Shown: positions 104-23,569, counted from the stretch's first letter. The stretch: DNA of 64,000 bases from Diadema antillarum (GCF_040938485.1 NW_027271595.1:310001-374000), one strand, 5' to 3'. The notes: generated from the letters alone by a model not told the origin. Numbers and translations: made by a program.

Positions 104-3100
104 ATGAAAGCTGCATTAGTATTAGTGGTGGTTGCTCTGCTCGTCCCAGGTCTTCTCGCCGGACCGGTCGGCAGCGGCGTCCTCGACAGACTCGCTCGAG
201 ACGTGCCTCCTCAGAAGGATGAGCCGGTGGTAAGCACAGTTAAATATTCACGAGTTCAAGTTCAGTTTCTTCTAGTTATTTCTTTCGCTCAGATTCTATA
301 ACACCGCCGATATTGCAGCACTTTTGATACAATGGTTTGCTAAACTCCGCTCTCTAACATCCTAGTCCACCCCCATTCTTTGTGCTTTTCAGGAAACCCC
401 TCCCCCTAAGAAAGAAGTGGATCTCTCCATCTCCGAAGAGAAGCCAGTGGCATCCCACCAGGAGCCCAAAGATGAAGAAAATACTCCAGGAACTTTTCAG
501 GGAGACATGAAGATGACTGATGAGCAGTTGAGGGAAGTCATGGAGGCCATCGATGAAGAGAAAGCTGGTCGCAAGAAGAGGAAGGCTGTATCGAACACTT
601 TGACCCGATGGAATCAGAACATCGTGCCTTACGAAATCTCAGCTTCATCTAGTAAGTTCTGGCAACTGTATGATATCAACAATGAAGAGAGAACGTGGGC
701 AATTTATACTCTGGGCTCTCTTTAAGATATCATCTGTAGGTTTCGTCACCTGTAGGTCGGTAAATGTGCTGTATTTCAAGTCTTAGAGACAGGACTTTGA
801 AGATAAAGATTCTACACAAATATACAGTAACTGGTATTCGTTGATTAAACTTTATATACTGATATTTTCATTCTTAAGGTTCATTATCTTCGTCTTGTTG
901 ACTATATTTCAGGCAGTGATGTCAACGCGATCCACGACCACTTGATCATACTTGATAATGATCATTTATGCCTTCTTCGGCAAACAAAAACGCAAATTCT
1001 ATACCAAATGTAGTCAGAATCATTGATTGTGATTTTTTCCTGGTGTAGAGTTCTTGGTAGGCTCATTATCATGATTGTTATCATCTTGTTGATTGTATTT
1101 CAGGTAATGATGTTGATGCGATCCGGGCTGCCATGGATCACTGGGAACAGCACACCTGTTTGAGGTTCGAACCAAAAACCGCACAGCACGCCAGTCAGCT
1201 GGGACACGGAACCTATCTGAACTTTATCAAGAGCGATGGATGCTGGTCCTACGTTGGAAGATTCTCTTCATCCATCTCTTCGCCCAGAGCTCAGGATATT
1301 TCCATCGGATCTGGATGTGAATCCGTGAGTTTGCTGCTATAGCTGATTTTGTAATACACGTAACATTTTTTTTTTATTTGATGCCAAATCATTACATATC
1401 ATATGATTTCAAACAAATAATTTTCTAATCCGTAGTTCCAGAAAGGTACATCAAAAAATATAAGTATTATGTAAATATTCAAAAGATGTTAAGGTTCGGG
1501 TTCACACCCCCCCCCCCCTCACGTCCATTAGTGCGGATATTAAAAAGTGTGACGAATACAATGAGATGTTATTGCGGCAATATAACACCAGTGAAACATG
1601 TCACAATAGTAGCCCGTAGATGTAATTTCAGAATTGGTATTTTGGAAGAGTTGAAATTCGATTATGAATCATTTTTCTTCAGTTCCATTTAATAACTCCT
1701 TTCCTTTAATTCTAACAATGATAGCTCGGCGTCGTTGCCCACGAGATTGGCCACGCCATCGGTTTCCATCACGAGCAGTCTCGCCCTGACAGGGACGATT
1801 ACGTCACGGTCCATTTCGAAAACATCCGGTCTGGATTCGAAGGCAACTTTGAGAAATATTCCTGGAACCAAATAACAACCAGCAACGTTGAATACGACAT
1901 CGGATCCCTCATGCACTACGGATCTCATGTAAGTTTTCATGATTTCAAATCTATTAGGATATAATTGACATGTTCATTTTCTTCCCTTTCGTTTATACCC
2001 TGAATTGCAAATCAGGGGAAGCTATTAAATCAGTTATGATAAAGATGTGGAGCGGAAACATAGGCTATCTTTTCCTGACAGGTTCGAACAGCTAGGGTAA
2101 CCTTGTTTGAAAGCGTTGGTATTATTATCATGCCCCTCTTTCTTTCTTCCTTACCATGCAGGGTTTCTCCTCCAACGGCCAAGCAACCATCACCACAAAC
2201 GATCCTCTGCAGACGCTTCTTCTGGGAAACCGAGAGGGCCTCAGATTTGCCGACATCAAACTTGCCAATCTCATCTACAACTGCAACGACGCCTGTACTA
2301 GCACACTGTCCTGCCAAAATGGCGGCTACCAGGGTCCCAACTGTGACTGCGTGTGTCCTCCAGGATTCAGCGGAGACCTGTGTGAGAACGGTGACGGTCC
2401 GACGGAACCCGAAGGATGTGTCTACAGACTGACCGATCCCGAAGGAGAGATCATGTCACCAAACTACCCGAATAACTATGACATCAACCAAAAATGCCTT
2501 TACTTGATAGAGGTGAGTATTTCAAACTGCAGCCTTGTTACTGTATGGTGGAATTTAAAGAGCATTTGAATATACGGTTCGTCCTGTTTCACAGAGATCC
2601 TAGATTAGATAACAAAATCATATTCATCACCAACCTAAGTAATGATTGAATGTGACAGTACAAGGTTTTAAAATGTCTTCCCCAATTGTATATTTTTTAT
2701 TTCCAGGGAGCTCCAGGCGCTACAATCACACTCACCTTCGTCGACATGGACATCGAGTCTCATTCGACCTGCGACTACGACTCCGTGGAGGTCCGCACTG
2801 GAGATATCAGTTCGCCCGGCCCTAAGTTTTGCGGCACCACCCTACCTGGGGAGCAGGTGTCGACCGGGAACCAACTACTGGTGGCTTTCACCTCTGACTA
2901 CAGTGTGACAGGGCGTGGCTTCCAGGCTTCATATGTCATCAATGGTGGCGTCATGACAACTACTACCACAAAGTCTCCCACTACTGTCAAGACAACTACT
3001 ACTACACAGTCTCCTACTACTACCACACAATCTCCCACAACTACCACACAGCCTCCCACAACTACCACACAGCCTCCCACAACTACCACACGATCTCCCA

Positions 3101-4591
3101 CAACTGCCACACAATCTCCCACAACTACCACACAATCTCCCACTACCACCAAAACAACTACCAGCACCCCAACGGTATTCGTGGGTACTTGTGGAGGAGA
3201 CTTCACCGGGAACAGTGGGACGATGGCCTCTCCTAACTACCCAGGCAACTATGACAACGACTTGGAGTGCGTCTACACCATCGAGGTCGATCCTGGTCGT
3301 CGAGTTGAACTCAGCTTCGACGATATGCTGATTGAGAATCAAAGGAAGTGCAAATGGGACTCTCTTGAGGTCAACTTAGGAGAAGGTGTCAAGGTGCCGA
3401 TGAAGTGAGTTTTCTTTTACAGAATCACCAACAGCCTCATAAAGGTGAAATGTATATTGTCATGAACATGCATTTATGTTAAGCAAGTACACGTACTGAA
3501 TAACCTATTCAGCCCAGGTGGGGCAGAGGAAGATTCGAGACTATGGGGACTACGGCGCTGGAGGAGGCGCGGGGACAAATAAAGTTTCGTTGTTACTTAT
3601 AGGGGATGGGTAGTAACTGATCAGTGGGAATCAGTGGGAATGCTGGGGGATGATTGTTCCGATCCTTGTGGGATTCATTTAAGAGTACATTATATATCTA
3701 TTGTTGTGTGAAAATAATTTGCTTCGGAATGGTCTCATATTCAAGTAATGTGTAGTTTAATGTTTCCAGGTTTGCATGACTGTACAGTGACGGGGCGATC
3801 GTTAACGATTAACTGCACATTACTTGATTATGAGACCATTCTAAAGAGAATAATTTTCACACAACAATAGATATAATTATAATGTACTCTTAATTGAATC
3901 CCACAACGATTGGAACAATTATACCCCAGCATTCCCACTGATTCCCACTGATCAGTTACTAGCCCTTCCCCTTTAAGTCTGGTATGGTGATGGTGATTTG
4001 TTTGGTGTCAATTATGATATGTGTGACATGTTGAGTTGCCACCATCATCTTTTCCTATCCTCCGTCATAATGCCATCTCAGGTTTAGTTGTTAGAGTAAA
4101 AATTTACTTGCCAGACTCACAAGGGTGAGGTGAAAGTCTTCATATTACTTGCTCTCCTTCGATGTTAATTTTAAAAGAAAAATCATTCATTTGGAAAGCA
4201 ATGACTCTATCGAATAGTTGTGCATTTGTGCATTTGCTTTTCACATGTCTTTAAGCTCTTACAAAATGAATAACTACGTCTATTTTCTGTCATATTATGT
4301 TTGATTGTAATGATGCAAAACAATGTTTGAGGAAATCATTAAATATTAAATTCTGTGATAACTTTCTCTGAATAGTTTCGTTCAGGAGTAGAGTTCTTGA
4401 CTCTACAACACTTTGATTTATAAAATAAACTAATGGACATTTAATTTTGTTTCTTCATCAGGTTGTGTGGACCTAACTATCCAACCGGCTCTCTGGTCTC
4501 AGTTAACAACAAAATGGAGCTGATTCTGCGGACCGACAATAGTGTCGCTGAAAGAGGCTTCGCTGCAGTCTACCGTGCCATCGATATCTAG
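104..4591 (+). CDS. SpAN/BP10: Astacin-EGF-CUB-CUB metalloprotease copy 1 (SpAN/BP10-like), 7 exons: 104-229, 393-651, 1104-1324, 1725-1928, 2162-2512, 2707-3404, 4462-4591; 662 aa
   Basis: All introns are GT-AG and phases join into one ORF (1989 nt). It has a signal peptide, the pro-domain Asp-switch FQGD, a basic RKKRK cleavage site, HEIGHAIGFHHEQSRPDRD, the Met-turn SLMHY, an EGF domain, two CUB domains and a Thr-rich linker. This is the SpAN/BP10 architecture. Confidence 0.93.
2956..3170 (+). repeat. Coding 21-bp tandem repeat (TTTTQ[S/P]P)n forming the Thr-rich inter-CUB linker of copy 1
   Basis: About seven acaactaccacaca(g/a)(c/t)ctccc units plus degenerate flanking units; absent from copies 2 and 3. 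Confidence 0.95.
3601..3972. mobile_element. Foldback MITE, Kolobok-like, in intron 6 of copy 1
   Basis: ~165-bp imperfect inverted arms with AGGGG...CCCCT termini, flanked by TTAT and TTAA (TTAA target with one mismatch). Confidence 0.75.
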
Positions 4592-5193: not shown

Positions 5194-5210
5194 CCGTCTG
5201 GGACGGCTGG
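5194..5210 (+). promoter_or_regulatory. 3'UTR hairpin CCGT-CTGGG-ACGG (SRE-like), copy 1; partner CCGT-CTGAG-ACGG at 5480-5492
   Basis: 4-bp GC-rich stem with a CNGGN loop; the same motif recurs in all three 3'UTRs. Confidence 0.6.
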
Positions 5211-5513
5211 ATTTGTTTCTTTATTTATCCGTTTGTCTGTGTGCTTGTTAGCTTGATTCCTGTCTGGTTTATTTTTCCAGATGATGGTTTACTGTGACAC
5301 AACGATGAAAGTTAGTTTGTCGTGCAAAATATTTAAGAAGAATGTGTTATTAATATTATGCCCCATATTATTCGTTCGAAGTATCCTCTGTATCTTCAGA
5401 GCATATTATTCACACGAGATGATGTGTTAGTATAACGCACAGACATAAATATAAGTTATAGTTGTTATCAGTTTTCTTCCCGTCTGAGACGGCTGGGTTC
5501 GCTTGTTATCTGA

Positions 5514-5519
5514 AATAAA
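5514..5519 (+). terminator. Polyadenylation signal AATAAA, copy 1
   Basis: Canonical hexamer ~920 nt after the stop, just downstream of the second hairpin; the position is mirrored by ATTAAA in copies 2 and 3. Confidence 0.55.
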
Positions 5520-5936
5520 GTTGAATTGTGATATGGAAATCTAACGTCTCAAATACCTTCCTTGATGACATTGCTCACTTAACGCACCAGCAATAGCCGC
5601 TGTACTTGAATATGCTACTATCATGAATGAACACGCAAACACACACATCCGCATATTATATATACATGTGTGTGTGTATGTGTACATGAGTTTGTGTGAC
5701 TCTGGGCCTGCTTGATTTATCTCGTATCATGCAACAAAATGATAATGTATGAATCATAGAATTGTAGTGTCTAATAGTTTTCATTTTGTGATATGAACTG
5801 CATTTGGAGTGATAAAATAATACATGTAGTGTGTACACATATTTCAAATGAAGGCCCAGTATATATTTAAGATATGTATATCAATAGGGCTATTATGATA
5901 GATATGTGTGTGCGCATGTGGGATCATTCAAACGCT

Positions 5937-7614: not shown

Positions 7615-10600
7615 ATGAAAGGCGCGCTTCTTTTGGCGATTGTTGCCCTGCTGGTCCCGGGCTTTCTCGCCGTACCGGTCGGCAGCGGGGTCCTCGACAG
7701 ACTCGCTCGAGACGCGCATCTTCAGAAGGATGAACCAATGGTAAGCACAGTAACCCAACATTGATTTTATTCTAACTCTTGTTTAATTCTTCTCTTGATT
7801 GTTCGTTTTCTTTTCAGTTTCATATAGTTGCTACATTTGTTACACTGTGTATAGTTGTTACAGTATATATACAAACGACACACAATATAATTTCCATCTT
7901 TGCGTTTGTTTGTTGTTGTTTTTCAGGAAACTCCTCCCCCTAAGAAAGAAGTGGATCTCCCCGTCTCCGAAGAGAAACTAGTGGCATCCCACCAGGAGCC
8001 CAAAGATGAAGAAAATACTCCAGGAACTTTTCAAGGAGACATGATGTTGACCGATGAACAACTGAGGGAAGTCATGGAGGCCATCGATGAAGAGAAAGCT
8101 GGTCGCAAGAAGAGGAAGGCTGTATCGAACACTTTGACCCGCTGGAATCAGAACATCGTGCCTTACGAAATCTCCGGTTCATCGAGTAAGTTTATAACAT
8201 TTACCTTAAGTCAATTCAGTTTGAATTTCAGGTTGAAGTTGAATTTTCAGTGACGTATAATAATGTATCAAACATAATTCACCAACGATACATCTTTCTT
8301 GATATTCGGCCTTTTATGATAAATATTATGGTCATATTTAATATGGTCACACTTGATTATGATTATAATATGTCTGCTTCGGCAAACAAATCGCGAATTT
8401 TATACAAAATGTAGTCTTTATCATTGATTGGGATTTTTACCTGTTGTGAACGTTCCCTGAAAGCTAATTGTTGTCATCTTGTTGATTGTATTTTAGGTAA
8501 TGATGTTGATGTGATCCGGGCTGCCATGGACCACTGGGAACAGCACACCTGTTTGAGATTCGAACCTCGAACCTCACAGCACTCCAGTCAATTGGGACAC
8601 GGAACCTATCTGAACTTTATCAAGGGTGGTGGATGCTGGTCCTACGTTGGAAGGTTCTCCTCATCAAGCAACACGCCCAGAGCTCAGGAAATTTCCATCG
8701 GATCTGGATGCGAATACGTGAGTTTACTGTTATTCTTGAGTCGCTGTGTTCATTTTAATAAATTTCCAAATACATAATTCCAGTGATTAAAATTTGGTTT
8801 GCCTTTCCAGTGTTTACAGGTACAATCTTTTATCTGCGTTTATGTACAGTGCAGTGGTTACAAAAGTTGCGGTAAATTATCACTAGGAAGACTGGAAAAA
8901 GTGTGCCAGTAGTTATAGATTCAAAATCTGTATTTTGTCGGTGATGTATTATGATCTTTAATTCCTATATTTGATTCCCTGAGGTTCTTATTTTTCTTTA
9001 TTCCCCTTTCAACAACAGCTTGGCATCGTCGCTCATGAGATCGGCCACGCCATCGGTTTCCATCACGAGCAGTCTCGCCCTGACAGGGACGATTACGTCA
9101 CGGTCCATTTTGAAAACATCCAGTCGGGATTCGAAGGCAACTTTGAGAAATATTCCTGGAACCAAATAACAACCAGCAACGTTGAATACGACATCGGATC
9201 AGTGATGCACTATGGATCTCATGTAAGTTTCAAATTTGAAATTGAGTCTGTGGTTAAAAGATTATAATGACCCTAATGCCTAATACTAATGATGAAAGCA
9301 GAACGGTGAATTCGGTGAGGCTCTAGGATGTCCTAATAGGCCTATATGCCTTTTCTTGTATTTTTCTGTATCTTCATTATCCTTTATAATTCTTCTCAAA
9401 AGTAATGTCTCACGTTAATTTCTATGTTAAGTCTCATCTTAAGTATGTATATTTATTCTTGTAATCAGTTATGATAAAGATGTGGACCGGAAACATAGGC
9501 TATCTTTTCCTGACAGGTTCGAACAGCTAGGGTAACCTTGTTTGAAAGCGTTGGTATTATCATCGTGCCCCTCTTTTTTTCTTCCTTACCATGCAGGGTT
9601 TCTCCTCCAACGGCCAACCAACCATCACCACAAACGACCCTCTGCAGATGCATCGCCTTGGAAACCGAGAGGGCCTCAGCTTTGCTGACATCAAACTTGC
9701 CAATCTCATCTACAACTGCAACGACGCCTGTACTAGCACACTGTCCTGCCAAAATGGCGGCTACCAGGGTCCCAACTGTGACTGCGTGTGTCCTCCAGGA
9801 TTCAGCGGAGACCTGTGTGAGAACGGTGACGACCCGACGGAACCCGAAGGATGTGTCTACAGACTGACCGATCCCGAAGGAGAGATCATGTCACCAAACT
9901 ACCCGAATAACTATGACAACAACCAGAATTGCCTGTACATGATTGAGGTGAGATATTTTGATTACCCCACCAAATTTGTATTTGCACCTAGCGTAATTAC
10001 ATACCACTTTTTTGAATAGGTAATTTTACTTTTTCCCTATAGATAACATCTTTGTACGTTTTAAATGTTGCTCGTTGATTGTTACCACTTCTTAATTAGT
10101 CTTAAGTGGATTGGGTAATAAATATCATGAAAATATTCACACTATTTTCATTCATCCATTGACCTTTCTAGGGAGCTCCAGGTGCTACGATCACACTCAC
10201 CTTCGTCGACATGGACATCGAGTCCCACACTACCTGCGCCTACGACTCTGTTGAGGTCCGCACTGGAGATGTTAGCTCGCCGGGACTGAAGTTTTGCGGC
10301 ACCGCCCTACCTGGGGAGCAGGTGTCGACCGGAAACCAGCTACTGGTGGCCTTCACATCAGACTACAGCGTGACAAGGCGTGGCTTCAAGGCTACCTATG
10401 TCATCAATAATCCTGAACCTCCAACTACACTCCCGAGTACGACCAACGGTCTTGGAGAATTCGTCGGTACTTGTGGAGGAGATTTCTTGGGGAACAGTGG
10501 GACGATGGCCTCTCCAAACTACCCAGACAACTACGACAACGGCTTGCTATGCGTCTACACCATCGAGGTTGATTCTGGTCGTCGAGTCGAACTCAGCTTC

Positions 10601-11129
10601 CACGATTTGCTGATTGAGGATCAAAGGAGGTGCAGCTGGGACTACCTTGAGGTGAACCTCGGAGAAGGAGTCAAGGTGCCTATGAAGTAAGTATTGCCGT
10701 CGTGACATTAATCACATCCACACACTTTAACTGAACGTCATAATTCATCCACTCTTCTCTGATTTAGGCTCATAATGGAGTGTTTGATAGCATGGACCTA
10801 TGATATTGAAAATTTAGTATGATGGAGAATTCGAGAATTCCTTATCAGTTAAGAAAGTTAATCACAATAGTTATCATGATTTTTCATCTAATAAGTAGAT
10901 TGAATTAGACAAAGTTAACAGTTGCCATTTCACAATATTACCCGTTATCAAAAATACGATTCTAACCGACTGTTTCGCTATTTTATATTATTTTCTCAGG
11001 TTGTGTGGGTCCGACTATCCGATTGGTTCTCTGGTTTCTATTGGTAACAAAATAGAGCTGACGCTAAGGACCGACGGAAGCGTGACAGATAGGGGCTTTG
11101 CTGCAATCTACCGTGCAATCGACCTGTAA
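7615..11129 (+). CDS. SpAN/BP10: Astacin-EGF-CUB-CUB metalloprotease copy 2, 7 exons: 7615-7740, 7927-8185, 8497-8717, 9019-9222, 9597-9947, 10172-10686, 11000-11129; 601 aa
   Basis: Exon sizes and phases match copy 1 except for a shorter exon 6. HEIGHAIGFHHE and SVMHY are intact, and no stops or frameshifts were seen. Confidence 0.93.
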
Positions 11130-11619: not shown

Positions 11620-11806
11620 CCGTCTGGTACGGCTGGAAACTTATTTCGCTTAAAGAATTATATTCCAGGTATCTCATCTATGCATTGATTGTATTTATGA
11701 TACTTTATGTTGGAATTTGTGATTGTATTTATGAAACATTGTGTAATGAAATTTACGATTGCACATTAATCTATGTATTTATAACTTGACCGTCTGGGAC
11801 GGCTGG
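11620..11806 (+). promoter_or_regulatory. Pair of SRE-like 3'UTR hairpins, copy 2 (11620-11632 loop CTGGT; 11790-11802 loop CTGGG)
   Basis: Invariant CCGT/ACGG stem, CNGGN loop, trailing CTGG; ATTAAA at 11826-11831. Confidence 0.6.
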
Positions 11807-12134
11807 TAGCGAGTCAAAATATGATATTAAAATGTTTTGATAATTATAAACATAACACGCCATCGTAATATGATCATTGATTTGCTGAACTCATGCAATG
11901 AACGATGAATGGGTATGTGTGGGACATGAAAGTGTGTGACAGCGTTTGTGTGTACCTTGTGCATGTTTGGAGGGTATACAACATCTAAGTCAATGTCAGC
12001 GATCGTGAAGGTGTTTTTATCTAGGCCTATTTGAAGTCTTCAAGTCAGTTTTTTTCGTAACACAATCCTAAAGAACTTCCCAATTTGTCTTTGCAAAACT
12101 CTCTGATCCTTTGTCATCCACATTTACTTATCTC

Positions 12135-12249: not shown

Positions 12250-13915
12250 ATATTCAAATCCATTCAATTCATTTTATTTCCATACTTCTCATTCATGAAC
12301 TTTATAACAGAAATCAAACAAGTTTTTTCACCTTGTAAACAATGCAAAACACAACAATATACATGGTGATAACACAGTAATTATGTAATAACTGGTCAAA
12401 TTCGAAATCGAGATTGGGTTGATCAAAGAAAAGTATGACGGGGCCTACATGAAAGCAAGCTTGTTTGGCTGTAAGCCCCGAGTAATCAGTGTTTGTGAAA
12501 AAGAAACGGAGAACGGATAGTAGATAAGACCAGATGATGTAAGGGTGCCAAATAAGAAAAAAAATATGCTAAAATGTGAACTATTGCGGTGACCGAGCTA
12601 TCATTGGTTTCAGGAGTACAACATGATTTGCATAATCATAAAGCCTACTTTGGTATATACACTATAAACTGTCGTTGCATTAAAGCTATCGCCAGGATAT
12701 GATCAGTAAGACACAAGAAGTAACATGTACAGCTATCAAGCCATTTGGTGCCCGCCGTCAAGCTCTGTATAGAAAGTTAGGGAGAGAAAGATGGAAAGAG
12801 GAGGAGAGGGAAGCGAAGTAGAATGTGGAATTGATAATGATGAATTCGGAGAGCCTGACAGCAAGACCCAAAATGGAATCTGCAGCGTGTTGACAAGAAT
12901 GTTTGATCGGACAATAACATACCACAATATTGCATAAGACATTACAATTATTCAGTTTCTGCAAGATATACCCTCAATAAAGACTCTTTGAATTTGCGTT
13001 TAAAGGAATATAAAGACGAGCAGCTTGTTATTTCGGGGGAGAGGTCATTCCAATATCTAGGGCCCGTATACATTATCGTTTTTTTTAGCGAAAATTGTTC
13101 GAGTACGTGGAAGGTGAAATGCGTCACTTTGGCGGGTAGGATAATTATTAATCAAATAGCTTTTCCTGAACATGCGAGTGAAAACATCCGGTAACTCCTT
13201 GGCAGAAAACTTATACATAAATATGCCGACGTTGTAACTAAATAAATCTGATGTTTTCAGTATCTTATTTTTGAAAAATAAATCATTCGTGAGGGACAAA
13301 TATCCAACATGGTTGATATTTCTGATGGCGCGTTTTTGAACACGGAACAGTATGTCAAGAAGATTTCTAGGTGCATTCCCCCAAACAAGAATGCCATAAT
13401 CAAGGTACGGAGTAATCAAAGTAGAATAAAGATTAAGCAGGATTTGACTTGGAAAAACATTCTTCAGTTTATTAAGAACACCCGTATTTTGGGAAAGAAT
13501 ATTAATTAAATAACTGACGTGAGATTTCCAAGACAAATCACTGTCAATAAAAAGCCCTAGAAATTTTATACTACTAACTTGATTTAATTCAGTTTCATTA
13601 AACTTGATGTTACAAGGAAGGGTTTTAAGGCTGTTGCTAAAAAGCATACAATGAGTTTTATCGATATTAAGTGACAATTTGTTGGCGTATATCCAAGATT
13701 GCACAGATTTAAATTCTTTATTCATTGTGTTAACAAGAGTATAAGGATCTCTGTGTGTAAAAAAACAGATTGGAGTCGTCAGCAAAACATATAAAGGAAA
13801 GAATTGGCGAGGAACTAGGAAGATCGTTAATGTACAAAATGAACCAAAGTGGGCCTAGTAAGGAGCCCTGTGGAACACCACATGTTTGAGTATGTACCAC
13901 AATCATTACGCTCAG
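12250..13915 (-). mobile_element. 5'-truncated L2/CR1-group (Crack/Daphne-like) LINE: RT C-terminal half plus 3'UTR
   Basis: Minus strand reads GVPQGSLLGP...FADD, then after a frameshift the 242-aa ORF NKLSLNIDKT...KFLG...LDYGILVWG...VQKRAIR. It ends in an AATAAA/(TTGAA)-like tail near 12255. Boundaries are approximate. Confidence 0.88.
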
Positions 13916-18758: not shown

Positions 18759-21700
18759 GAAACCCCTCCCCCTAAGAAAGAAGTGGATCTCTCCATCTCC
18801 GAAGAGAAGCCCGTGGCATCCCACCAGGAGCCCAAAGATGAAGAAAATACTCCAGGGACTTTTCAGGGAGACATGAAGATGACTGATGAACAGTTGAGGG
18901 AAGTCATGGAGGCCATCGATGAAGAGAAAGCTGGTCGCAAGAAGAGGAAGGCTGTATCGAACACTTTGACCCGCTGGAATCAGAACATCGTGCCTTACGT
19001 CATCTCATCTTCATCTAGTAAGTTCTGGAACCTGTATGATATCAACAATGAAGAGAGGACGTGGGCAATTTAGACTTTGGGCTCTCTTTAAGATATCATC
19101 TGTAGGTTTCGTCACCTGTAGGCCGGTAAATCTACTGTATTTCAAGTCTTAGAGACAGGACTTTGAAGATATAGATTCTACACAAATATAACTGGTATTC
19201 GTTGATAACACTTTATATAATGATATTTTCATTCTTGAGGCTCAGTATCTTCATCTTGTTGGCTGTGTTTCAGGCAGTGATATCAACGTGATCCACGACC
19301 ACTTGATCATACTTGATAATGATCATTTATGCCTTCTTCGGCAAACAAAAACACAAATTCTGTACCAAATGTAGTCAGAATCATTGATTGTGATTTTTTC
19401 GTGGTGTAAAGTTCTTGGTAGGCTCATTATCATGTTGTCATCTTGTTGATTGTATTTCAGGTGATGATGTTGATGCGATCCGGGCTGCCATGGATCACTG
19501 GGAGCAGCACACCTGTTTGAGATTCGAACCAAGAACCTCACAGCACGCCAGTCAGCTGGGACACGGAACCTATCTGAACTTTATCAAGGACGATGGATGC
19601 TGGTCCTACGTTGGAAGGTTCTCTTCATCCAGCGATTCGCCCACAGCTCAGGATATTTCCATCGGATCTGGATGTGAAGACGTGAGTTTGCTGCTATAGC
19701 TGATTTTGTAACAAGCGTAATATTCTTTTGATTTGATACCAAATCATTACATATCATTCGATTTCAAATCAATTATTTCCTAATCCGTAGTTCCAGGAAG
19801 GTACATTTTTTTTTTGATGTAAGTGTTATGCAAATAATATACAAAAGTTGTTATGGTTTGGGTTCGCCCCCCCCCCTTCATTAGTGCGGATATACAATGT
19901 GATGAATACAATGAGATCTTATTGCGGCAATATAACACCAGTGAAGCATGTCACAATCAGGCAATAGTAGCCCGTAGATGTGAATTCAGAATTGGTATTT
20001 TGGAAGAGATGAATTTCGTTTATGAATCCTTTTTCTTCATTTCCAATCAATAACTCCTTTCTTTTAATTCTACCAACAACAGCTCGGCGTCGTTGCCCAC
20101 GAGATTGGCCACGCCATCGGTTTCCATCACGAGCAGTCTAGACCTGACAGGGACGATTACGTCACAGTCCATTTTGAAAACATCCAGTCTGGATTCGAAG
20201 GCAACTTTGAGAAATATTCCTGGAACCAAATAACAACCAGCAACGTTGAATACGACATCGGATCCCTCATGCACTACGGACCTCGTGTAAGTTTTCATGA
20301 TTTCAAATCTATTAGGATATAACTGACATGTTCATTTTCTTCCCTTTCTACCCTGAACTGTAAATCATGGGAAGCTATAAATCAGGTATGATGAACAATG
20401 TGGACCGGAAACGTAGGCCATCTTTTACTGGCAAGTTCGAATAGGCTAACTTTGTTTGAAAGCGTTGATATTATTATAATGCCTCCTCTTTTTTCTTTCA
20501 TACCACGCAGGGTTTCTCCTCCAACGGCCAACCAACCATCACCACAAACGACCCTCTGCAGATGCATCGCCTTGGAAACCGAGAGGGCCTCAGCTTTGCT
20601 GACATCAAACTTGCCAATCTCATCTACAACTGCAACGACGCCTGTACTAGCCCACTGTCCTGCCAAAATGGCGGCTACCAGGGTCCCAACTGTGACTGCG
20701 TGTGTCCTCCAGGATTCAGCGGAGACCTGTGTGAGAACGGTGACGGTCCGACGGAACCCGAAGGATGTGTCTATAGACTGACCGATCCCGAAGGAGAGAT
20801 CATGTCACCAAACTACCCGAATAACTATGACAACAACCAGAATTGCCTGTACATGATTGAGGTGAGATATTTTGATTACCCCACCAAATTTGTATTTGCA
20901 CCTAGCGTAATTACATACCACTTTTTGAATAGGTAATTTTACTTTTTCCCTATAGATAACATCTTTGGACATTTTAAATGTTGCTCGTTGATTGTTACCA
21001 CTTCTTAATTAGTCTTAAGTGGATTGGGTAATAAATATCATGAAAATATTCACACTATTTTCATTCATCCATTGACCTTTCTAGGGAGCTCCAGGTGCTA
21101 CGATCACACTCACCTTCGTCGACATGGACATCGAGTCCCACACTACCTGCGCCTACGACTCTGTTGAGGTCCGCACTGGAAATGTTAGCTCGCCGGGACT
21201 GAAGTTTTGCGGCACCGCTCTACCTGGGGAGCAGGTGTCGACCGGAAACCAGCTACTGGTGGCCTTCACATCAGACTACAGCGTGACAAGGCGTGGCTTC
21301 AAGGCTACCTATGTCATCAATAATCCTGAACCTCCAACTACACTCCCGAGTACGACCAACGGTCTTGGAGAATTCGTCGGTACTTGTGGAGGAGATTTCT
21401 TGGGGAACAGTGGGACGATGGCCTCTCCAAACTACCCAGACAACTACGACAACGGCTTGCAGTGCGTCTACACCATCGAGGTTGATTCTGGTCGTCGAGT
21501 CGAACTCAGCTTCCACGATTTGCTGATTGAGGATCAAAGGAGGTGCAGCTGGGACTACCTTGAGGTGGACCTCGGAGAAGGAGTCAAGGTGCCAATGAAG
21601 TAAGCATTGCTATCATGTCATTAATCATATCCACACACTTTAACTGAACGTCATAATTCATCCACTCTTCTCTGATTTAGGCACATAATGGAGTGTTTGA

Positions 21701-22043
21701 TAGCATGGACCTATGATATTGAAAATTTGGTATGGTGGAGAATTCGAGAATTCCTTATCAGTTAAGAAAGTTGATCACTATAGTTATCATGATTTTTCAG
21801 TTAATAAGTAGACTGAATTAGACAAAGTTAAGAGTTGCCATTTCACAATATTGCCCGTTATTAAAAAGTACGATACTAACCGACTGTTTCGCTATTTTAT
21901 ATTACTTTCTCAGGTTGTGTGGGTCCGACTATCCGATTGATTCTCTGGTTTCTATTGGTAACAAAATGGAGCTGATTCTAAGGACCGACGGAAGCGTGAC
22001 AGATAGGGGCTTTGCTGCAATCTACCGTGCAATCGACCTGTAA
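18759..22043 (+). CDS. SpAN/BP10: Astacin-EGF-CUB-CUB metalloprotease copy 3, exons 2-7: 18759-19017, 19461-19681, 20083-20286, 20511-20861, 21085-21599, 21914-22043; exon 1 (signal peptide) not visible
   Basis: Exon sizes are identical to copy 2, with intact splice sites, frame, zinc motif and Met-turn. Exon 1 may lie in the N gap at 18222-18349 or may be lost. Confidence 0.85.
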
Positions 22044-22528
22044 GAAGCATCACCGAAGACACCTCGAATTCCATAAACTCGAAATAAGCCTTCCGTTGAA
22101 GTCCGCGAAAACGTATTGCTTACACGTAGAAAGAAAGAAATATTATGAGTCAGGAAATTATCACATTTCCTTCTTATTTTGCTTGTTTGTTTGTATGTTT
22201 GTCTTTTATTTTGGAAATTTCGTTATTATGATTTTACAGCAAGATTAATTGTTTCTGTCCACTCCTGAGCATTCGAGATAATAGTGGAAAAAAATGAACC
22301 CGAGTATAACGGAAATGGAATATTTCTTTTAGAAGCCTTAAATTGCTTTAAGAAGAAATCTAACCAATTTTGTCGAAGTGATGATAAGAATAGGATTTTG
22401 TGTTCATTCTGCAGGGCTGAACCTTTGCCATAGACTATTACTGTTAGTGCTATAGAAATACTGAAATGTGAAAAGCCAAGAGTATTGTTCTAAAAATTTG
22501 CATGTATATTCGAACTGTGTCTTGATAT

Positions 22529-22718
22529 CCGTCTGGTACGGCTGGCTAACTTGTTTCGTTTAAAGAATTATATTCCAGGTATCTCATCTATGCATTGATT
22601 GTATTTATAATACTTTGTATGTTGGAATTTGTGATTGTATTTATGAAACATTGTGTAATGAAATTTACGATTGCACATTAATTTATATATTTATAACTTA
22701 ACCGTCTGGGACGGCTGT
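22529..22718 (+). promoter_or_regulatory. Pair of SRE-like 3'UTR hairpins, copy 3 (22529-22541; 22702-22714)
   Basis: Same motif as in copies 1 and 2; ATTAAA at 22737-22742. Confidence 0.6.
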
Positions 22719-23106
22719 TATAGTGAGTCAAAATATATTAAAATGTTTGGATAATTATAAAACATAACAGGCAATCGTAATATGATCATTGATGTGTTGA
22801 ACTCATGTCATGTATGATGAATGGGTATGTGTGGAACATGGAAGTGTGTGACTGTGTTTGTGAGTTTCTTGTGCATGTTTGGAGGGTATACGACATAGAC
22901 ATGTCAATGTCAGCGATTGTGAAGGTATTTTTATCTATTTGAGCAGTCTTCAAGTTAGTTTTTCGTAACACAATCCTAAAGGCTTTCACAATTCATCTCT
23001 GCAAAACTCTCTGATCCTTTGTCATTCATATATATATATATTCATATATAAGATGAAGAAGTAGAGTGGTAATGCATTTTGACAGTCCAACAGTGCTATT
23101 TATTCA

Positions 23107-23146
23107 GACCAAATTTTCGACGAATACATTCGTCTTCCTCAGGGTC
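23107..23146 (-). ncRNA. Minimal type I hammerhead ribozyme
   Basis: GACC-CTGAGGA-A-GACGAA(TGTA)TTCGTC-GAAAATTT-GGTC: stem I 4 bp, stem II 6 bp, palindromic AATT stem III, NUH = UUU. Confidence 0.72.
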
Positions 23147-23261
23147 GACAATGACAATTCTGAAAGTAAACAAGGTGACTCTATTCTCTATCTAATAATA
23201 CAAGATAATACACTCTTGAGAGAATAGAGTCACCTTGTTTACTTTCAGAATTGTCATTGTC

Positions 23262-23298
23262 GACCCTGAGGAAGACGAATGTCGTCGAAAATTTGGTG
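23262..23298 (+). ncRNA. Minimal hammerhead motif, mutated copy
   Basis: GACC-CTGAGGA-A-GAC(GAATGTC)GTC-GAAAATTT-GGTG: 3-nt deletion in stem II and one stem I mismatch. Confidence 0.6.
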
Positions 23299-23569
23299 TG
23301 AATAAATAGCACTGTTGGACTGTCAAAATGCATTACCACTCTACTTCTTCCGAAAGCTTCCACCAGCCGGCATCTTCTGTCATCATTACATTGTCTCGAT
23401 TATAATCTTCCTAAGATGACAGAGGCGAACGGTACGAGTACCAGCATCATCCCACTATATGTATCATAATTATATATACTAGTATGCATGTATATTGGGC
23501 ATTTGTTGTTTGATTCCCCCCCCCCCTCTTATTAATACTCATGCAGGCAGAAAAGTAATACGTGTAAAT

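What the first reader, a model, noticed from the sequence alone, without database searches (positions are those of the whole stretch)
5194..5519. Conserved paired Smaug-recognition-element-like hairpins in all three protease 3'UTRs
The motif CCGT-CTG(G/A)(G/T)-ACGG-CTG occurs twice per gene: 5194/5480, 11620/11790 and 22529/22702. The copy 1 3'UTR is otherwise barely alignable to copies 2 and 3. The stem is invariant and only loop bases vary, and five of six loops fit CNGGN. Established: Smaug/Vts1/SAMD4 SAM domains bind CNGG(N) stem-loops and recruit CCR4-NOT for mRNA clearance, and SpAN/BP10 transcripts are sharply transient in the early blastula. Inference: a Smaug-type decay module could time the protease pulse. 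I did not notice the motif elsewhere in the window. An alternative reading is a DNA-level SMAD-like (GTCT) site.
Basis: partly seen in the sequence, partly recalled or inferred. Interest (0 to 1): 0.8.

Follow-up and report, generated by a model that had tools for sequence, protein, structure and literature searches.

The report
Conserved 3'UTR hairpins in urchin proteases
A 17-letter hairpin motif, present two to four times in the 3'UTRs of one family of sea-urchin embryonic protease genes, has stayed nearly unchanged between distantly related urchins and lies inside the mature mRNA next to the poly(A) signal, so it is very probably an undescribed mRNA control element.

Summary
CCGTCTGRKACGGCTG occurs exactly six times in the window, twice downstream of each of three tandem astacin-CUB protease genes, with none expected by chance. 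The window matches Diadema antillarum SpAN-like/BP10-like proteins.

I found 33 copies of the core (U)CCGUC-N-G-R-N-ACGG-CUGG. All lie on the sense strand, in the 3'UTR or 3' flank of family members:
- Lytechinus pictus BP10-like;
- a strongylocentrotid-like contig;
- several spliced mRNA contigs, one of them polyadenylated.

The motif is the only long word these otherwise unalignable UTRs share. The last copy always sits 5-23 nt upstream of A(A/U)UAAA.

The Smaug reading is only partly supported:
- 20 of 29 canonical copies have CNGGN pentaloops.
- A conserved CUGAG class (9 of 29) breaks that consensus.
- The stem and the 3' CUGG tail are sequence-invariant, which an SRE does not need.
- Folding gives no thermodynamic support.
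- The SpAN-clade genes checked (S. purpuratus SpAN, a close strongylocentrotid copy, L. pictus SpAN-like) lack the motif.
- ZCCHC14/TENT4 reads the same loops but stabilises mRNAs, so the direction of any effect is open.
- The SMAD (GTCT) reading fails, because T is replaced by A in 10 of 29 canonical copies.

No RNA data could be obtained for Diadema itself. Other notes of this scan cover this gene array, but none found reports this motif.

The parts
5194..5210 (+). Copy 1, hairpin 1: CCGU/ACGG stem, loop CUGGG, tail CUGG
   Evidence: R1 score 34.8 bits
5480..5496 (+). Copy 1, terminal hairpin: loop CUGAG (not CNGG), tail CUGG; the stem ends 21 nt before AATAAA
11620..11636 (+). Copy 2, hairpin 1: loop CUGGU, tail CUGG
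11790..11806 (+). Copy 2, terminal hairpin: loop CUGGG, tail CUGG; the stem ends 23 nt before ATTAAA
22529..22545 (+). Copy 3, hairpin 1: loop CUGGU, tail CUGG
22702..22718 (+). Copy 3, terminal hairpin: loop CUGGG, tail CUGU; the stem ends 22 nt before ATTAAA
4592..5540 (+). Inferred 3'UTR of protease copy 1 (stop codon 4589-4591; AATAAA 5514-5519; the 3' end is inferred, not observed)
   Evidence: by homology with polyadenylated mRNA L080
11130..11855 (+). Inferred 3'UTR of protease copy 2 (stop codon 11127-11129; ATTAAA 11826-11831)
22044..22765 (+). Inferred 3'UTR of protease copy 3 (stop codon 22041-22043; ATTAAA 22737-22742)
4457..4591 (+). Last coding exon of copy 1 (end of the second CUB domain, ...AAVYRAIDI, then stop); the equivalent exons are 10995-11129 and 21909-22043

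Best explanation
The motif is an RNA-level cis-regulatory element of the mature 3'UTR. It is a short hairpin with a 4-bp CCGU/ACGG stem, a C-N-G-R-N pentaloop and a single-stranded CUGG tail. It is present in two to four copies per mRNA, and the last copy abuts the poly(A) signal. The element was probably already in the ancestral euechinoid SpAN/BP10-type protease gene. It was kept in the Diadema array and in two camarodont paralog groups, and lost in the SpAN subclade.

The most likely mode of action (inferred, not shown) is docking of a SAM-domain protein that reads CNGGN loops, of the Smaug/SAMD4 or ZCCHC14 class. Such a protein would recruit a poly(A)-tail enzyme and so set tail length, and with it the stability and translation of the protease mRNA. 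The extra constraint on stem, tail and the CUGAG class implies either a more sequence-specific reader than fly Smaug or a second factor.

Shown here: presence, position in mRNA, conservation and specificity to this gene family.
For: - Six of six copies in the window, none expected by chance.
- 33 copies in all, every one on the sense strand in the 3'UTR or 3' flank of family members (window, L001, L008, L009, L010, L034, L071, L072, L080).
- No further hit with E<0.01 in about 233 kb searched with covariance model R1.
- The motif is the longest exact word (17-19 nt) shared by the otherwise unalignable UTRs of Diadema, Lytechinus and the strongylocentrotid-like contig.
- It lies inside spliced mRNA contigs, and L080 ends in a poly(A) run about 20 nt after an ATTAAA that starts 5 nt after the last hairpin.
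- The terminal copy lies 5-23 nt before A(A/U)UAAA in all eight UTR ends that could be read, plus the L. pictus remnant.
- Variation falls on loop positions 2, 4 and 5. C1 and G3 are invariant, and hairpin 1 is CNGGN in every gene.
- All 88 stem cells pair. One pair shows GC 19, AU 2, GU 1, and the AU form is a double change.
- Generic CNGGN hairpins are expected at about 0.1 per UTR, and the only ones present are the conserved copies.
- The loops CUGGA and CAGGU are identical to proven ZCCHC14 sites in HAV and HBV (PMC9282228, PMC11055085). Five-nucleotide CUGG loops are the best Smaug sites (PMC4053848).
Against: - There are no RNA data for Diadema itself: none was listed, and the runs that were laid behaved as DNA.
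- Folding gives no support. Z-scores ran from -1.4 to +0.8. The stem probability averaged 0.46, against 0.56 with shuffled flanks.
- Covariation is minimal: three of four pairs never vary. A linear sequence motif is therefore not excluded.
- CUGAG loops (9 of 29) violate CNGG, yet they are conserved.
- The invariant stem and CUGG tail are unexplained by known SAM-domain recognition, which contacts the loop and the 5' side of the stem (PMC4053848).
- Echinoid SAMD4 or ZCCHC14 genes were not looked for here.
Confidence: 0.5

Rival explanations
1. The hairpins are Smaug/SAMD4 recognition elements that recruit CCR4-NOT, and they cause the rapid clearance that makes the protease mRNA pulse sharp.
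For: - 20 of 29 canonical copies, and 5 of 6 in the window, are CNGGN pentaloops on a paired stem.
- Every UTR has at least one such copy.
- Pentaloops and CUGG are the optimal Smaug sites (PMC4053848).
- SAMD4 is said to be conserved from yeast to human (abstract of PMC9893680, listed).
Against: - The SpAN-clade genes checked (S. purpuratus SpAN, a close strongylocentrotid copy, L. pictus SpAN-like), whose transient expression motivated the idea, lack the motif and any CNGGN hairpin.
- The conserved CUGAG class should bind Smaug poorly.
- Stem and tail invariance is not needed for an SRE.
- The closing base is U, whereas G is preferred (PMC4053848).
- No expression time course for the motif-bearing paralogs was available.
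Confidence: 0.2
2. The hairpins recruit a ZCCHC14-like SAM-domain adaptor with a TENT4 poly(A) polymerase. Mixed tailing then protects the mRNA from deadenylation, so the element raises output instead of clearing the message.
For: - It uses the same CNGGN pentaloop code. HBV SL-alpha carries CAGGU and HAV Vb carries CUGGA, both of which occur here (PMC11055085, PMC9282228).
- The conserved position of the last hairpin, 5-23 nt from the poly(A) hexamer, suits a tail-acting enzyme.
Against: - It has the same problems with CUGAG loops and with the invariant stem and tail.
- The pathway is described in mammalian cells and viruses. Its existence in echinoderms was not tested here.
Confidence: 0.15
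3. A different, sequence-specific factor reads the whole 17-mer (stem letters plus CUGG tail). It could be an auxiliary element for cleavage and polyadenylation, or for cytoplasmic tail control. On this view the likeness to an SRE is incidental.
For: - Eight core positions are invariant and four more are at least 90% conserved in the 22-copy alignment.
- The CUGG tail is kept in 24 of 29 canonical copies.
- The terminal copy is adjacent to the hexamer in every lineage.
- There is no thermodynamic support for the hairpin.
Against: - The upstream copies lie 90-600 nt from the poly(A) site, too far for a processing enhancer.
- The pattern of variation (C1 and G3 fixed, N2 and N5 free) matches the SAM-domain code closely.
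- The compensatory CCAU/AUGG variant favours pairing.
- No candidate protein is known.
Confidence: 0.2
4. This is a DNA-level site (a SMAD-like GTCT site or a palindromic transcription-factor site) acting as a 3' enhancer, or a neutral leftover of a repeat spread by gene conversion.
For: - The core is a DNA palindrome (CCGT N5 ACGG) and contains GTCT in most copies.
- Paralogs in tandem arrays can homogenise each other.
Against: - GTCT becomes GTCA in 10 of 29 canonical copies.
- All 33 copies are on the sense strand, inside UTRs.
- The motif survives between lineages whose UTRs are otherwise unalignable, which gene conversion within one genome cannot explain.
- The surrounding sequence is single-copy in a relative's genome run, unlike the intron repeat at 3554-3977.
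- No copies occur elsewhere in the DNA searched.
Confidence: 0.05

Closest known systems
Smaug/Vts1/SAMD4 recognition element (SRE)
   Same: It is a short hairpin with a pentaloop starting C-N-G-G, located in the 3'UTR in several copies per mRNA. Loop positions 2 and 5 are free, while C1 and G3 are fixed (PMC4053848).
   Different: The stem letters and a 3' CUGG tail are invariant. A conserved CUGAG loop class breaks CNGG. The closing base is U rather than G. The last copy is tied to the poly(A) signal. No binding data exist.
ZCCHC14/TENT4-responsive CNGGN stem-loops (HBV PRE SL-alpha, HCMV RNA2.7, HAV Vb)
   Same: The loop sequences CAGGU and CUGGA are identical. The element would act on poly(A) tails, which fits the position beside the poly(A) signal (PMC11055085, PMC9282228).
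   Different: The cited sources describe these elements mainly in viral RNAs in mammalian cells. Here the element is cellular, multi-copy and echinoid. The opposite functional outcome from Smaug means the sequence cannot tell which applies.
Roquin constitutive decay element (Y-R-Y triloop hairpin); recalled from memory, not checked in a paper
   Same: If C5 pairs with G9, the element becomes a 5-bp stem with a triloop. The variant CCAUC-UGY-GAUGG (L001, L080, L034) has a Y-R-Y triloop.
   Different: The main copies would give UGG or UGA triloops, or cannot form the fifth pair at all (loops CUGGU, CUGGA, CAGGA, CAGGU).

Membership tests
Smaug recognition element (SRE) | Loop begins CNGG, with 4-8 nt in the loop (five is best) | tested here: inconclusive
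   Met by 20 of 29 canonical copies (5 of 6 in the window) and by at least one copy in every UTR. Not met by the conserved CUGAG class (9 of 29) or by the CUGYG variant (4 copies) (rule from PMC4053848).
Smaug recognition element (SRE) | The loop is closed by a base-paired stem of any sequence | tested here: met
   All 88 stem cells pair in 22 copies. However, the predicted probability of the stem averages 0.46 and is no better than with shuffled flanks. The stem is also sequence-invariant, which the family does not require.
Smaug recognition element (SRE) | Bound by a Smaug/SAMD4 SAM domain and confers repression or deadenylation | not testable with these tools
   This needs EMSA or RIP and reporter assays in embryos.
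Smaug recognition element (SRE) | A Smaug/SAMD4 gene is present and expressed in the embryo of the organism | not tested
   No query sequence was available by reference. A literature search gave nothing specific for echinoids.
ZCCHC14/TENT4-responsive pentaloop element | CNGGN pentaloop on a short stem | tested here: inconclusive
   The counts are the same as for the SRE. CAGGU and CUGGA loops are identical to the HBV and HAV sites.
ZCCHC14/TENT4-responsive pentaloop element | Mixed (G/U-containing) poly(A) tails that depend on TENT4 | not testable with these tools
   This needs TAIL-seq or direct RNA sequencing. No raw RNA reads were obtainable.
Roquin CDE | A 5-8 bp stem with a pyrimidine-purine-pyrimidine triloop (rule from memory) | tested here: not met
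   Only the four CCAUC-UGY-GAUGG variants fit. The main copies give UGG or UGA, or cannot form the fifth pair.
SMAD-binding element (GTCT/AGAC) | A conserved GTCT core | tested here: not met
   T is replaced by A (GTCA) in 10 of 29 canonical copies, at exactly the free N2 position of the loop.
Dispersed repeat or transposon fragment | Many copies unrelated to the gene family | tested here: not met
   - No copies lie outside family 3'UTRs in about 233 kb.
- Depth at the hairpin bins is single-copy-like in a relative's genome run, against 10^5-10^6 for the intron repeat.
- Among the AT-rich hits of the metagenome scan, only BP10-like 3'UTRs resembled the family. L039 is a coding-sequence chance hit. 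The GC-rich hits were taken as chance without inspection.
- A whole-genome scan was not possible.
SpAN/BP10 astacin-CUB protease family (the host genes) | Astacin domain plus CUB domains, grouping with echinoid SpAN/BP10 | tested here: met
   Pfam domains PF01400 and PF00431 appear on the homologues. Exon-by-exon tblastn gave about 81-83% mean identity to D. antillarum P0166 and P0169. In the tree, the window copies sit in a Diadema clade inside the echinoid SpAN/BP10 clade.

The most novel reading that the evidence does not exclude
The element is a dedicated 3'-end control module that has persisted since the Diadema-camarodont split (more than 200 million years by my own estimate). It has two loop classes: CNGGN upstream, and a CUGAG copy that is terminal beside the poly(A) signal in Diadema copy 1 and the L001/L080-type genes but middle in Lytechinus-type UTRs. 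Each class is read by a different factor. Together they set the poly(A) tail length of BP10-type protease mRNAs. This could be the post-transcriptional input that lets the level of these Chordin-cleaving 'scaler' proteases change with embryo size, whose regulation is stated to be unknown (PMC13319035).
Probability: 0.12. Interest if true: 0.8.

Novelty: new variant of a known kind. Interest (0 to 1): 0.6.

Why it matters
Span and Bp10 proteases cleave Chordin. They are proposed as size-dependent 'scaler' genes in sea-urchin embryos, and how their level is set is unknown (PMC13319035). This work identifies a short cis-element that is easy to mutate and is kept in the 3'UTRs of BP10-type paralogs across distant urchins, but is absent from the SpAN genes checked. 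That gives a concrete handle on post-transcriptional control of these mRNAs and a natural with/without comparison between paralogs.

It would also be one of the few cellular CNGGN-type hairpins outside flies, yeast and mammals with deep comparative support. It could show how SAM-domain readers, or a new reader, use stem and tail sequence in addition to the loop.

Tried and rejected
- **RNA evidence for Diadema.** The look-up of sequencing runs listed no RNA holder. The 'any' search gave runs of unknown kind which, once laid, covered introns and repeats like DNA. Transcript inclusion therefore rests on relatives.
- **First word search.** A search with the 159-aa CUB exon reached only exon-sized ORFs.
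- **Exhaustive representative search.** Multi-CUB giants swamped it, and it yielded one useful full-length protein, P0100.
- **Thermodynamic significance of the hairpin.** There is none.
- **Covariation.** It is weak, because the stem hardly varies.
- **Rfam.** No family matches the hairpins, at gathering or at E up to 10.
- **Metagenome scan for the CUGAG 17-mer.** It returned 90 loci. 81 of them have 45% G+C or more; apart from L039 and L080 these were not inspected and were taken as chance. One hit lies in the end of an RPB5-like coding sequence (L039).
- **SMAD/GTCT site.** Rejected on the T-to-A variation.
- **miRNA seed match.** I considered miR-184, which from memory would target UCCGUCC. 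I dropped it: it would be an offset, wobble match only, it would not explain the palindrome or the tail, and it was not tested.
- **Literature.** Searches found no paper on this element or on Smaug in echinoids.

Full report
**1. Observation**

The 16-mer CCGTCTGRKACGGCTG occurs at 5194, 5480, 11620, 11790, 22529 and 22702. All copies are on the + strand and there are none elsewhere in the 64 kb; shuffles gave 0.00 expected. The looser pattern CCGT-N5-ACGG finds the same six, with 0.16 expected. The loops are CUGGG, CUGAG, CUGGU, CUGGG, CUGGU and CUGGG.

Three-frame translation and tblastn with full-length homologues place the last coding exons at 4457-4588, 10995-11126 and 21909-22040. The stop codons are at 4589-4591, 11127-11129 and 22041-22043. 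Each gene has an A(A/T)TAAA hexamer 21-23 nt after the stem of its second hairpin, at 5514-5519, 11826-11831 and 22737-22742. The inferred 3'UTRs are therefore about 0.7-0.95 kb, with the hairpins inside them.

The copy 1 UTR is 45.6% and 47.6% identical to copies 2 and 3 over aligned columns, whereas copies 2 and 3 are 90.1% identical to each other. The longest exact word shared by copy 1 and copy 2 is the 17-mer. Copies 2 and 3 are not independent witnesses.

**2. The genes**

The exons encode astacin plus CUB proteases. They are closest to Diadema antillarum 'protein SpAN-like' (P0166) and 'blastula protease 10-like' (P0169), with a mean of about 81-83% over all HSPs and near-identical C-termini. 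They are only 51-54% identical to S. purpuratus SpAN and P. lividus BP10.

In a maximum-likelihood tree the window copies sit in a Diadema clade. The camarodont genes form its sister group. Within that group lie:
- a BP10-like set (L. pictus P0161, P0100, P0162 and the gene on L003, which matches the gene next to SpAN);
- a long-branched SpAN/BP10-proper subclade (S. purpuratus SpAN, P. lividus BP10, L. pictus SpAN-like);
- a further group (the gene on L001 plus P0168).

**3. The motif in other urchins**

I fetched loci through proteins found with the CUB exon and with P0100. I also made one metagenome scan for the CUGAG 17-mer. The same core turned up in the following places.

| Locus | What it is | Copies |
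|---|---|---|
| L001 | Genomic contig from the same ENA assembly as L002, which is 84-89% identical to S. purpuratus through SpAN introns. It carries two tandem genes. | Each gene has CNGGA, then a variant CCAUCUGYGAUGG, then CUGAG |
| L008 | L. pictus BP10-like | Three copies 600-965 nt after the stop, plus a second trio behind a CUB-exon fragment (a truncated duplicate) |
| L009 | Spliced mRNA contig from a JGI metatranscriptome | Three copies |
| L010 | Logan contig with an uninterrupted CDS (an apparent transcript; run type not shown) | One copy in a short partial UTR |
| L080 | Full-length mRNA (CDS 199-1926) | Four copies; the contig ends in a run of A about 20 nt after an ATTAAA that begins 5 nt after the last hairpin |
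| L034, L071, L072 | Partial mRNAs | Further copies |

That makes 33 copies in all:
- 29 with the CCGU-type stem (one of them a G-U form, CCGU/AUGG, in the L. pictus remnant);
- 4 with CCAU/AUGG.

Between lineages the motif is the longest shared exact word (17-19 nt). Everything else shared is AT-rich 10-12-mers. A covariance model built from 22 copies recovers them at 26-41 bits and finds nothing else with E<0.01 in about 233 kb. The best other hit has E=0.024 and lies inside a Polinton-like element.

**4. Where the motif is absent**

The model finds nothing in the 3' flanks of these genes:
- S. purpuratus SpAN (L007);
- the strongylocentrotid SpAN (L002);
- L. pictus SpAN-like (L011);
- D. 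setosum P0170 (L005);
- Patiria BP10-like (L012);
- the 820 nt of UTR available for P0168 (L006).

A generic scan for any stem of at least 4 bp with a CNGGN pentaloop finds none in the SpAN, SpAN-like, D. setosum or P0168 (L006) flanks and one unrelated hairpin in Patiria. In the motif-bearing UTRs it finds only the conserved copies, against about 0.1 expected per UTR.

By parsimony on the tree, the element was present before Diadema and camarodonts split and was lost in the SpAN subclade and in one Diadema paralog group. This is an inference; the tree is rooted only by the starfish genes. The split is more than 200 million years old by my own knowledge, which I did not test here.

**5. Anatomy**

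The consensus is (U)CCGUC-N-G-R-N-ACGG-CUGG.
- In the 22-copy alignment, eight core positions are invariant and four more are at least 90% conserved.
- The variable positions are loop positions 2 (U or A), 4 (G, or A only in CUGAG) and 5 (G, U or A).
- The loop tally is CAGGA 8, CUGGG 5, CUGGU 3, CUGGA 2, CAGGU 2 and CUGAG 9. So 20 of 29 canonical copies are CNGGN.
- Hairpin 1 of every gene is CNGGN.
- CUGAG recurs in Diadema copy 1, in the L001/L080-type genes (as the terminal copy) and in Lytechinus-type UTRs (as the middle copy).
- All 88 stem cells pair. Three pairs never vary and the third is GC 19, AU 2, GU 1, so there is one double (compensatory) change, shared by related copies.
- The CUGG tail is present in 24 of 29 canonical copies.
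- The terminal copy lies 5-23 nt before the poly(A) hexamer in all eight UTR ends that can be read, and in the L. pictus remnant.

Folding gives no independent support. The z-scores for 56-nt windows run from -1.4 to +0.8. The partition-function probability of the stem averages 0.46, against 0.56 when the flanks are shuffled. Rfam has no matching family.

**6. Mechanism**

The facts favour an RNA element over a DNA site or a relic:
- sense-strand only;
- inside mature, polyadenylated mRNA;
- several copies per UTR at drifting positions;
- one copy fixed beside the poly(A) signal;
- extreme conservation within neutral-looking UTRs.

The pattern of fixed and free loop positions is the code of CNGGN-reading SAM domains. 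For Smaug the consensus is CNGGN0-3 on a non-specific stem, five-nucleotide loops and CUGG are best, and the protein contacts the loop and the 5' side of the stem (PMC4053848).

The same loops are read by ZCCHC14, which recruits TENT4 for mixed tailing and protects RNAs from CCR4-NOT. Its HBV site is CAGGU and its HAV site is CUGGA, and both loops occur here (PMC9282228, PMC11055085). The sequence therefore cannot say whether the element destabilises or stabilises.

Three features go beyond both models: the invariant stem letters, the CUGG tail and the conserved CUGAG class. They point to a more sequence-specific reader or to a second factor.

I put about 0.85 on 'functional RNA cis-element'. 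I put about 0.5 on the statement given as best explanation (a SAM-domain-type reader acting on the tail). Within that, Smaug-type decay gets about 0.2 and ZCCHC14-type stabilisation about 0.15. A different factor gets about 0.2, and a DNA-level or neutral origin about 0.05.

**7.

It is partly supported. The link to the sharp SpAN/BP10 pulse is weakened, because the SpAN genes I could check lack the element. The motif-bearing genes are the BP10-like and related paralogs, and no time course was available for them. Their presence in plankton metatranscriptomes fits embryonic or larval expression, but that is only suggestive.

The GTCT/SMAD alternative fails, since the T is an A in 10 of 29 canonical copies.
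- The hairpins are inside mature mRNA in relatives.
- They are not a common repeat in the DNA available. The bins around them have single-copy-like depth in a related genome run, whereas the intron repeat at 3554-3977 reaches 10^5-10^6.

**8. Comparison and novelty**

The closest known things are SREs and ZCCHC14-responsive pentaloops. I found no description of this element in Rfam or in the paper library. I class it as a new variant of a known kind. It is an SRE-like hairpin with added sequence constraints, a second loop class and a fixed position at the poly(A) signal.

It matters because Span and Bp10 cleave Chordin and are proposed size-dependent scaler genes whose regulation is unknown (PMC13319035).

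**9. Limits**

- There is no RNA evidence from Diadema.
- No whole-genome scan was possible.
- The 3' ends of P. lividus BP10 and of the gene downstream of SpAN were not reached.
- The species behind L001/L002 and behind the metatranscriptome contigs are inferred from similarity only.
- Many of the 33 copies are related by descent, so counts are not independent events. Independent lineages number about four:
  - the Diadema array;
  - the BP10-like group, seen in L. pictus and in L009-type contigs;
  - the L001/L080 group;
  - the L010 transcript.

Noticed in passing
window 3554-3977 (intron of copy 1): This is a very high-copy repeat. Summed contig depth reaches 10^5-10^6 in a related genome run, against about 17 in the flanks, with many loose ends at 3596-3601 and 3964-3981.
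   Followed up: no
L008 16387-17400 (L. pictus, downstream of BP10-like P0161): A truncated duplicate lies here. It consists of a 29-aa CUB-exon fragment followed by a second copy of the 3'UTR with three hairpins, the first of them decayed to a G-U stem, and its own ATTAAA. It resembles the 'hollowed-out paralog' that another note reports upstream of this window.
   Followed up: partly
window 22900-23500: Another note calls the 296-bp palindrome here back-to-back hammerhead ribozymes. Rfam finds no hammerhead at gathering score in the whole window. At E up to 1 in this stretch it finds only generic long-hairpin (miRNA-precursor-like) matches, all below threshold.
   Followed up: partly
L006 2130-2738 (3'UTR of mRNA contig for P0168): The UTR is filled with a tandem array of units of about 60 nt, each containing TCATACTTCTGTTAGCGATTTTAC-like cores. 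The contig ends inside the array.
   Followed up: no
L001 13858-20570: A Polinton/Maverick-like element lies just downstream of the protease genes. Its hits are a double-jelly-roll capsid-like domain, an rve integrase and a faint Pox_A32 ATPase.
   Followed up: no
window 13057-13906 (- strand): ORFs with reverse-transcriptase-like motifs (...FADDSNLFF...) lie between copies 2 and 3, probably a retroelement fragment.
   Followed up: no
window 2686-3408 against 10211-10690 and 21124-21603: Copy 1 carries a long Thr/Pro-rich (PTTTTQS-type) linker between its CUB domains. Copies 2 and 3 lack it.
   Followed up: no
window 5627-5687: An imperfect (CA)n/(TG)n palindrome lies just past the copy 1 poly(A) site. 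It gives sub-threshold miRNA-family matches on both strands, which are most likely spurious.
   Followed up: no
L008 and L011 (L. pictus chromosome CM073230.1): BP10-like P0161 and SpAN-like P0165 are head-to-head neighbours about 11.5 kb apart. A further 578-aa astacin-CUB gene lies downstream of SpAN-like, as it does in S. purpuratus L007.
   Followed up: partly
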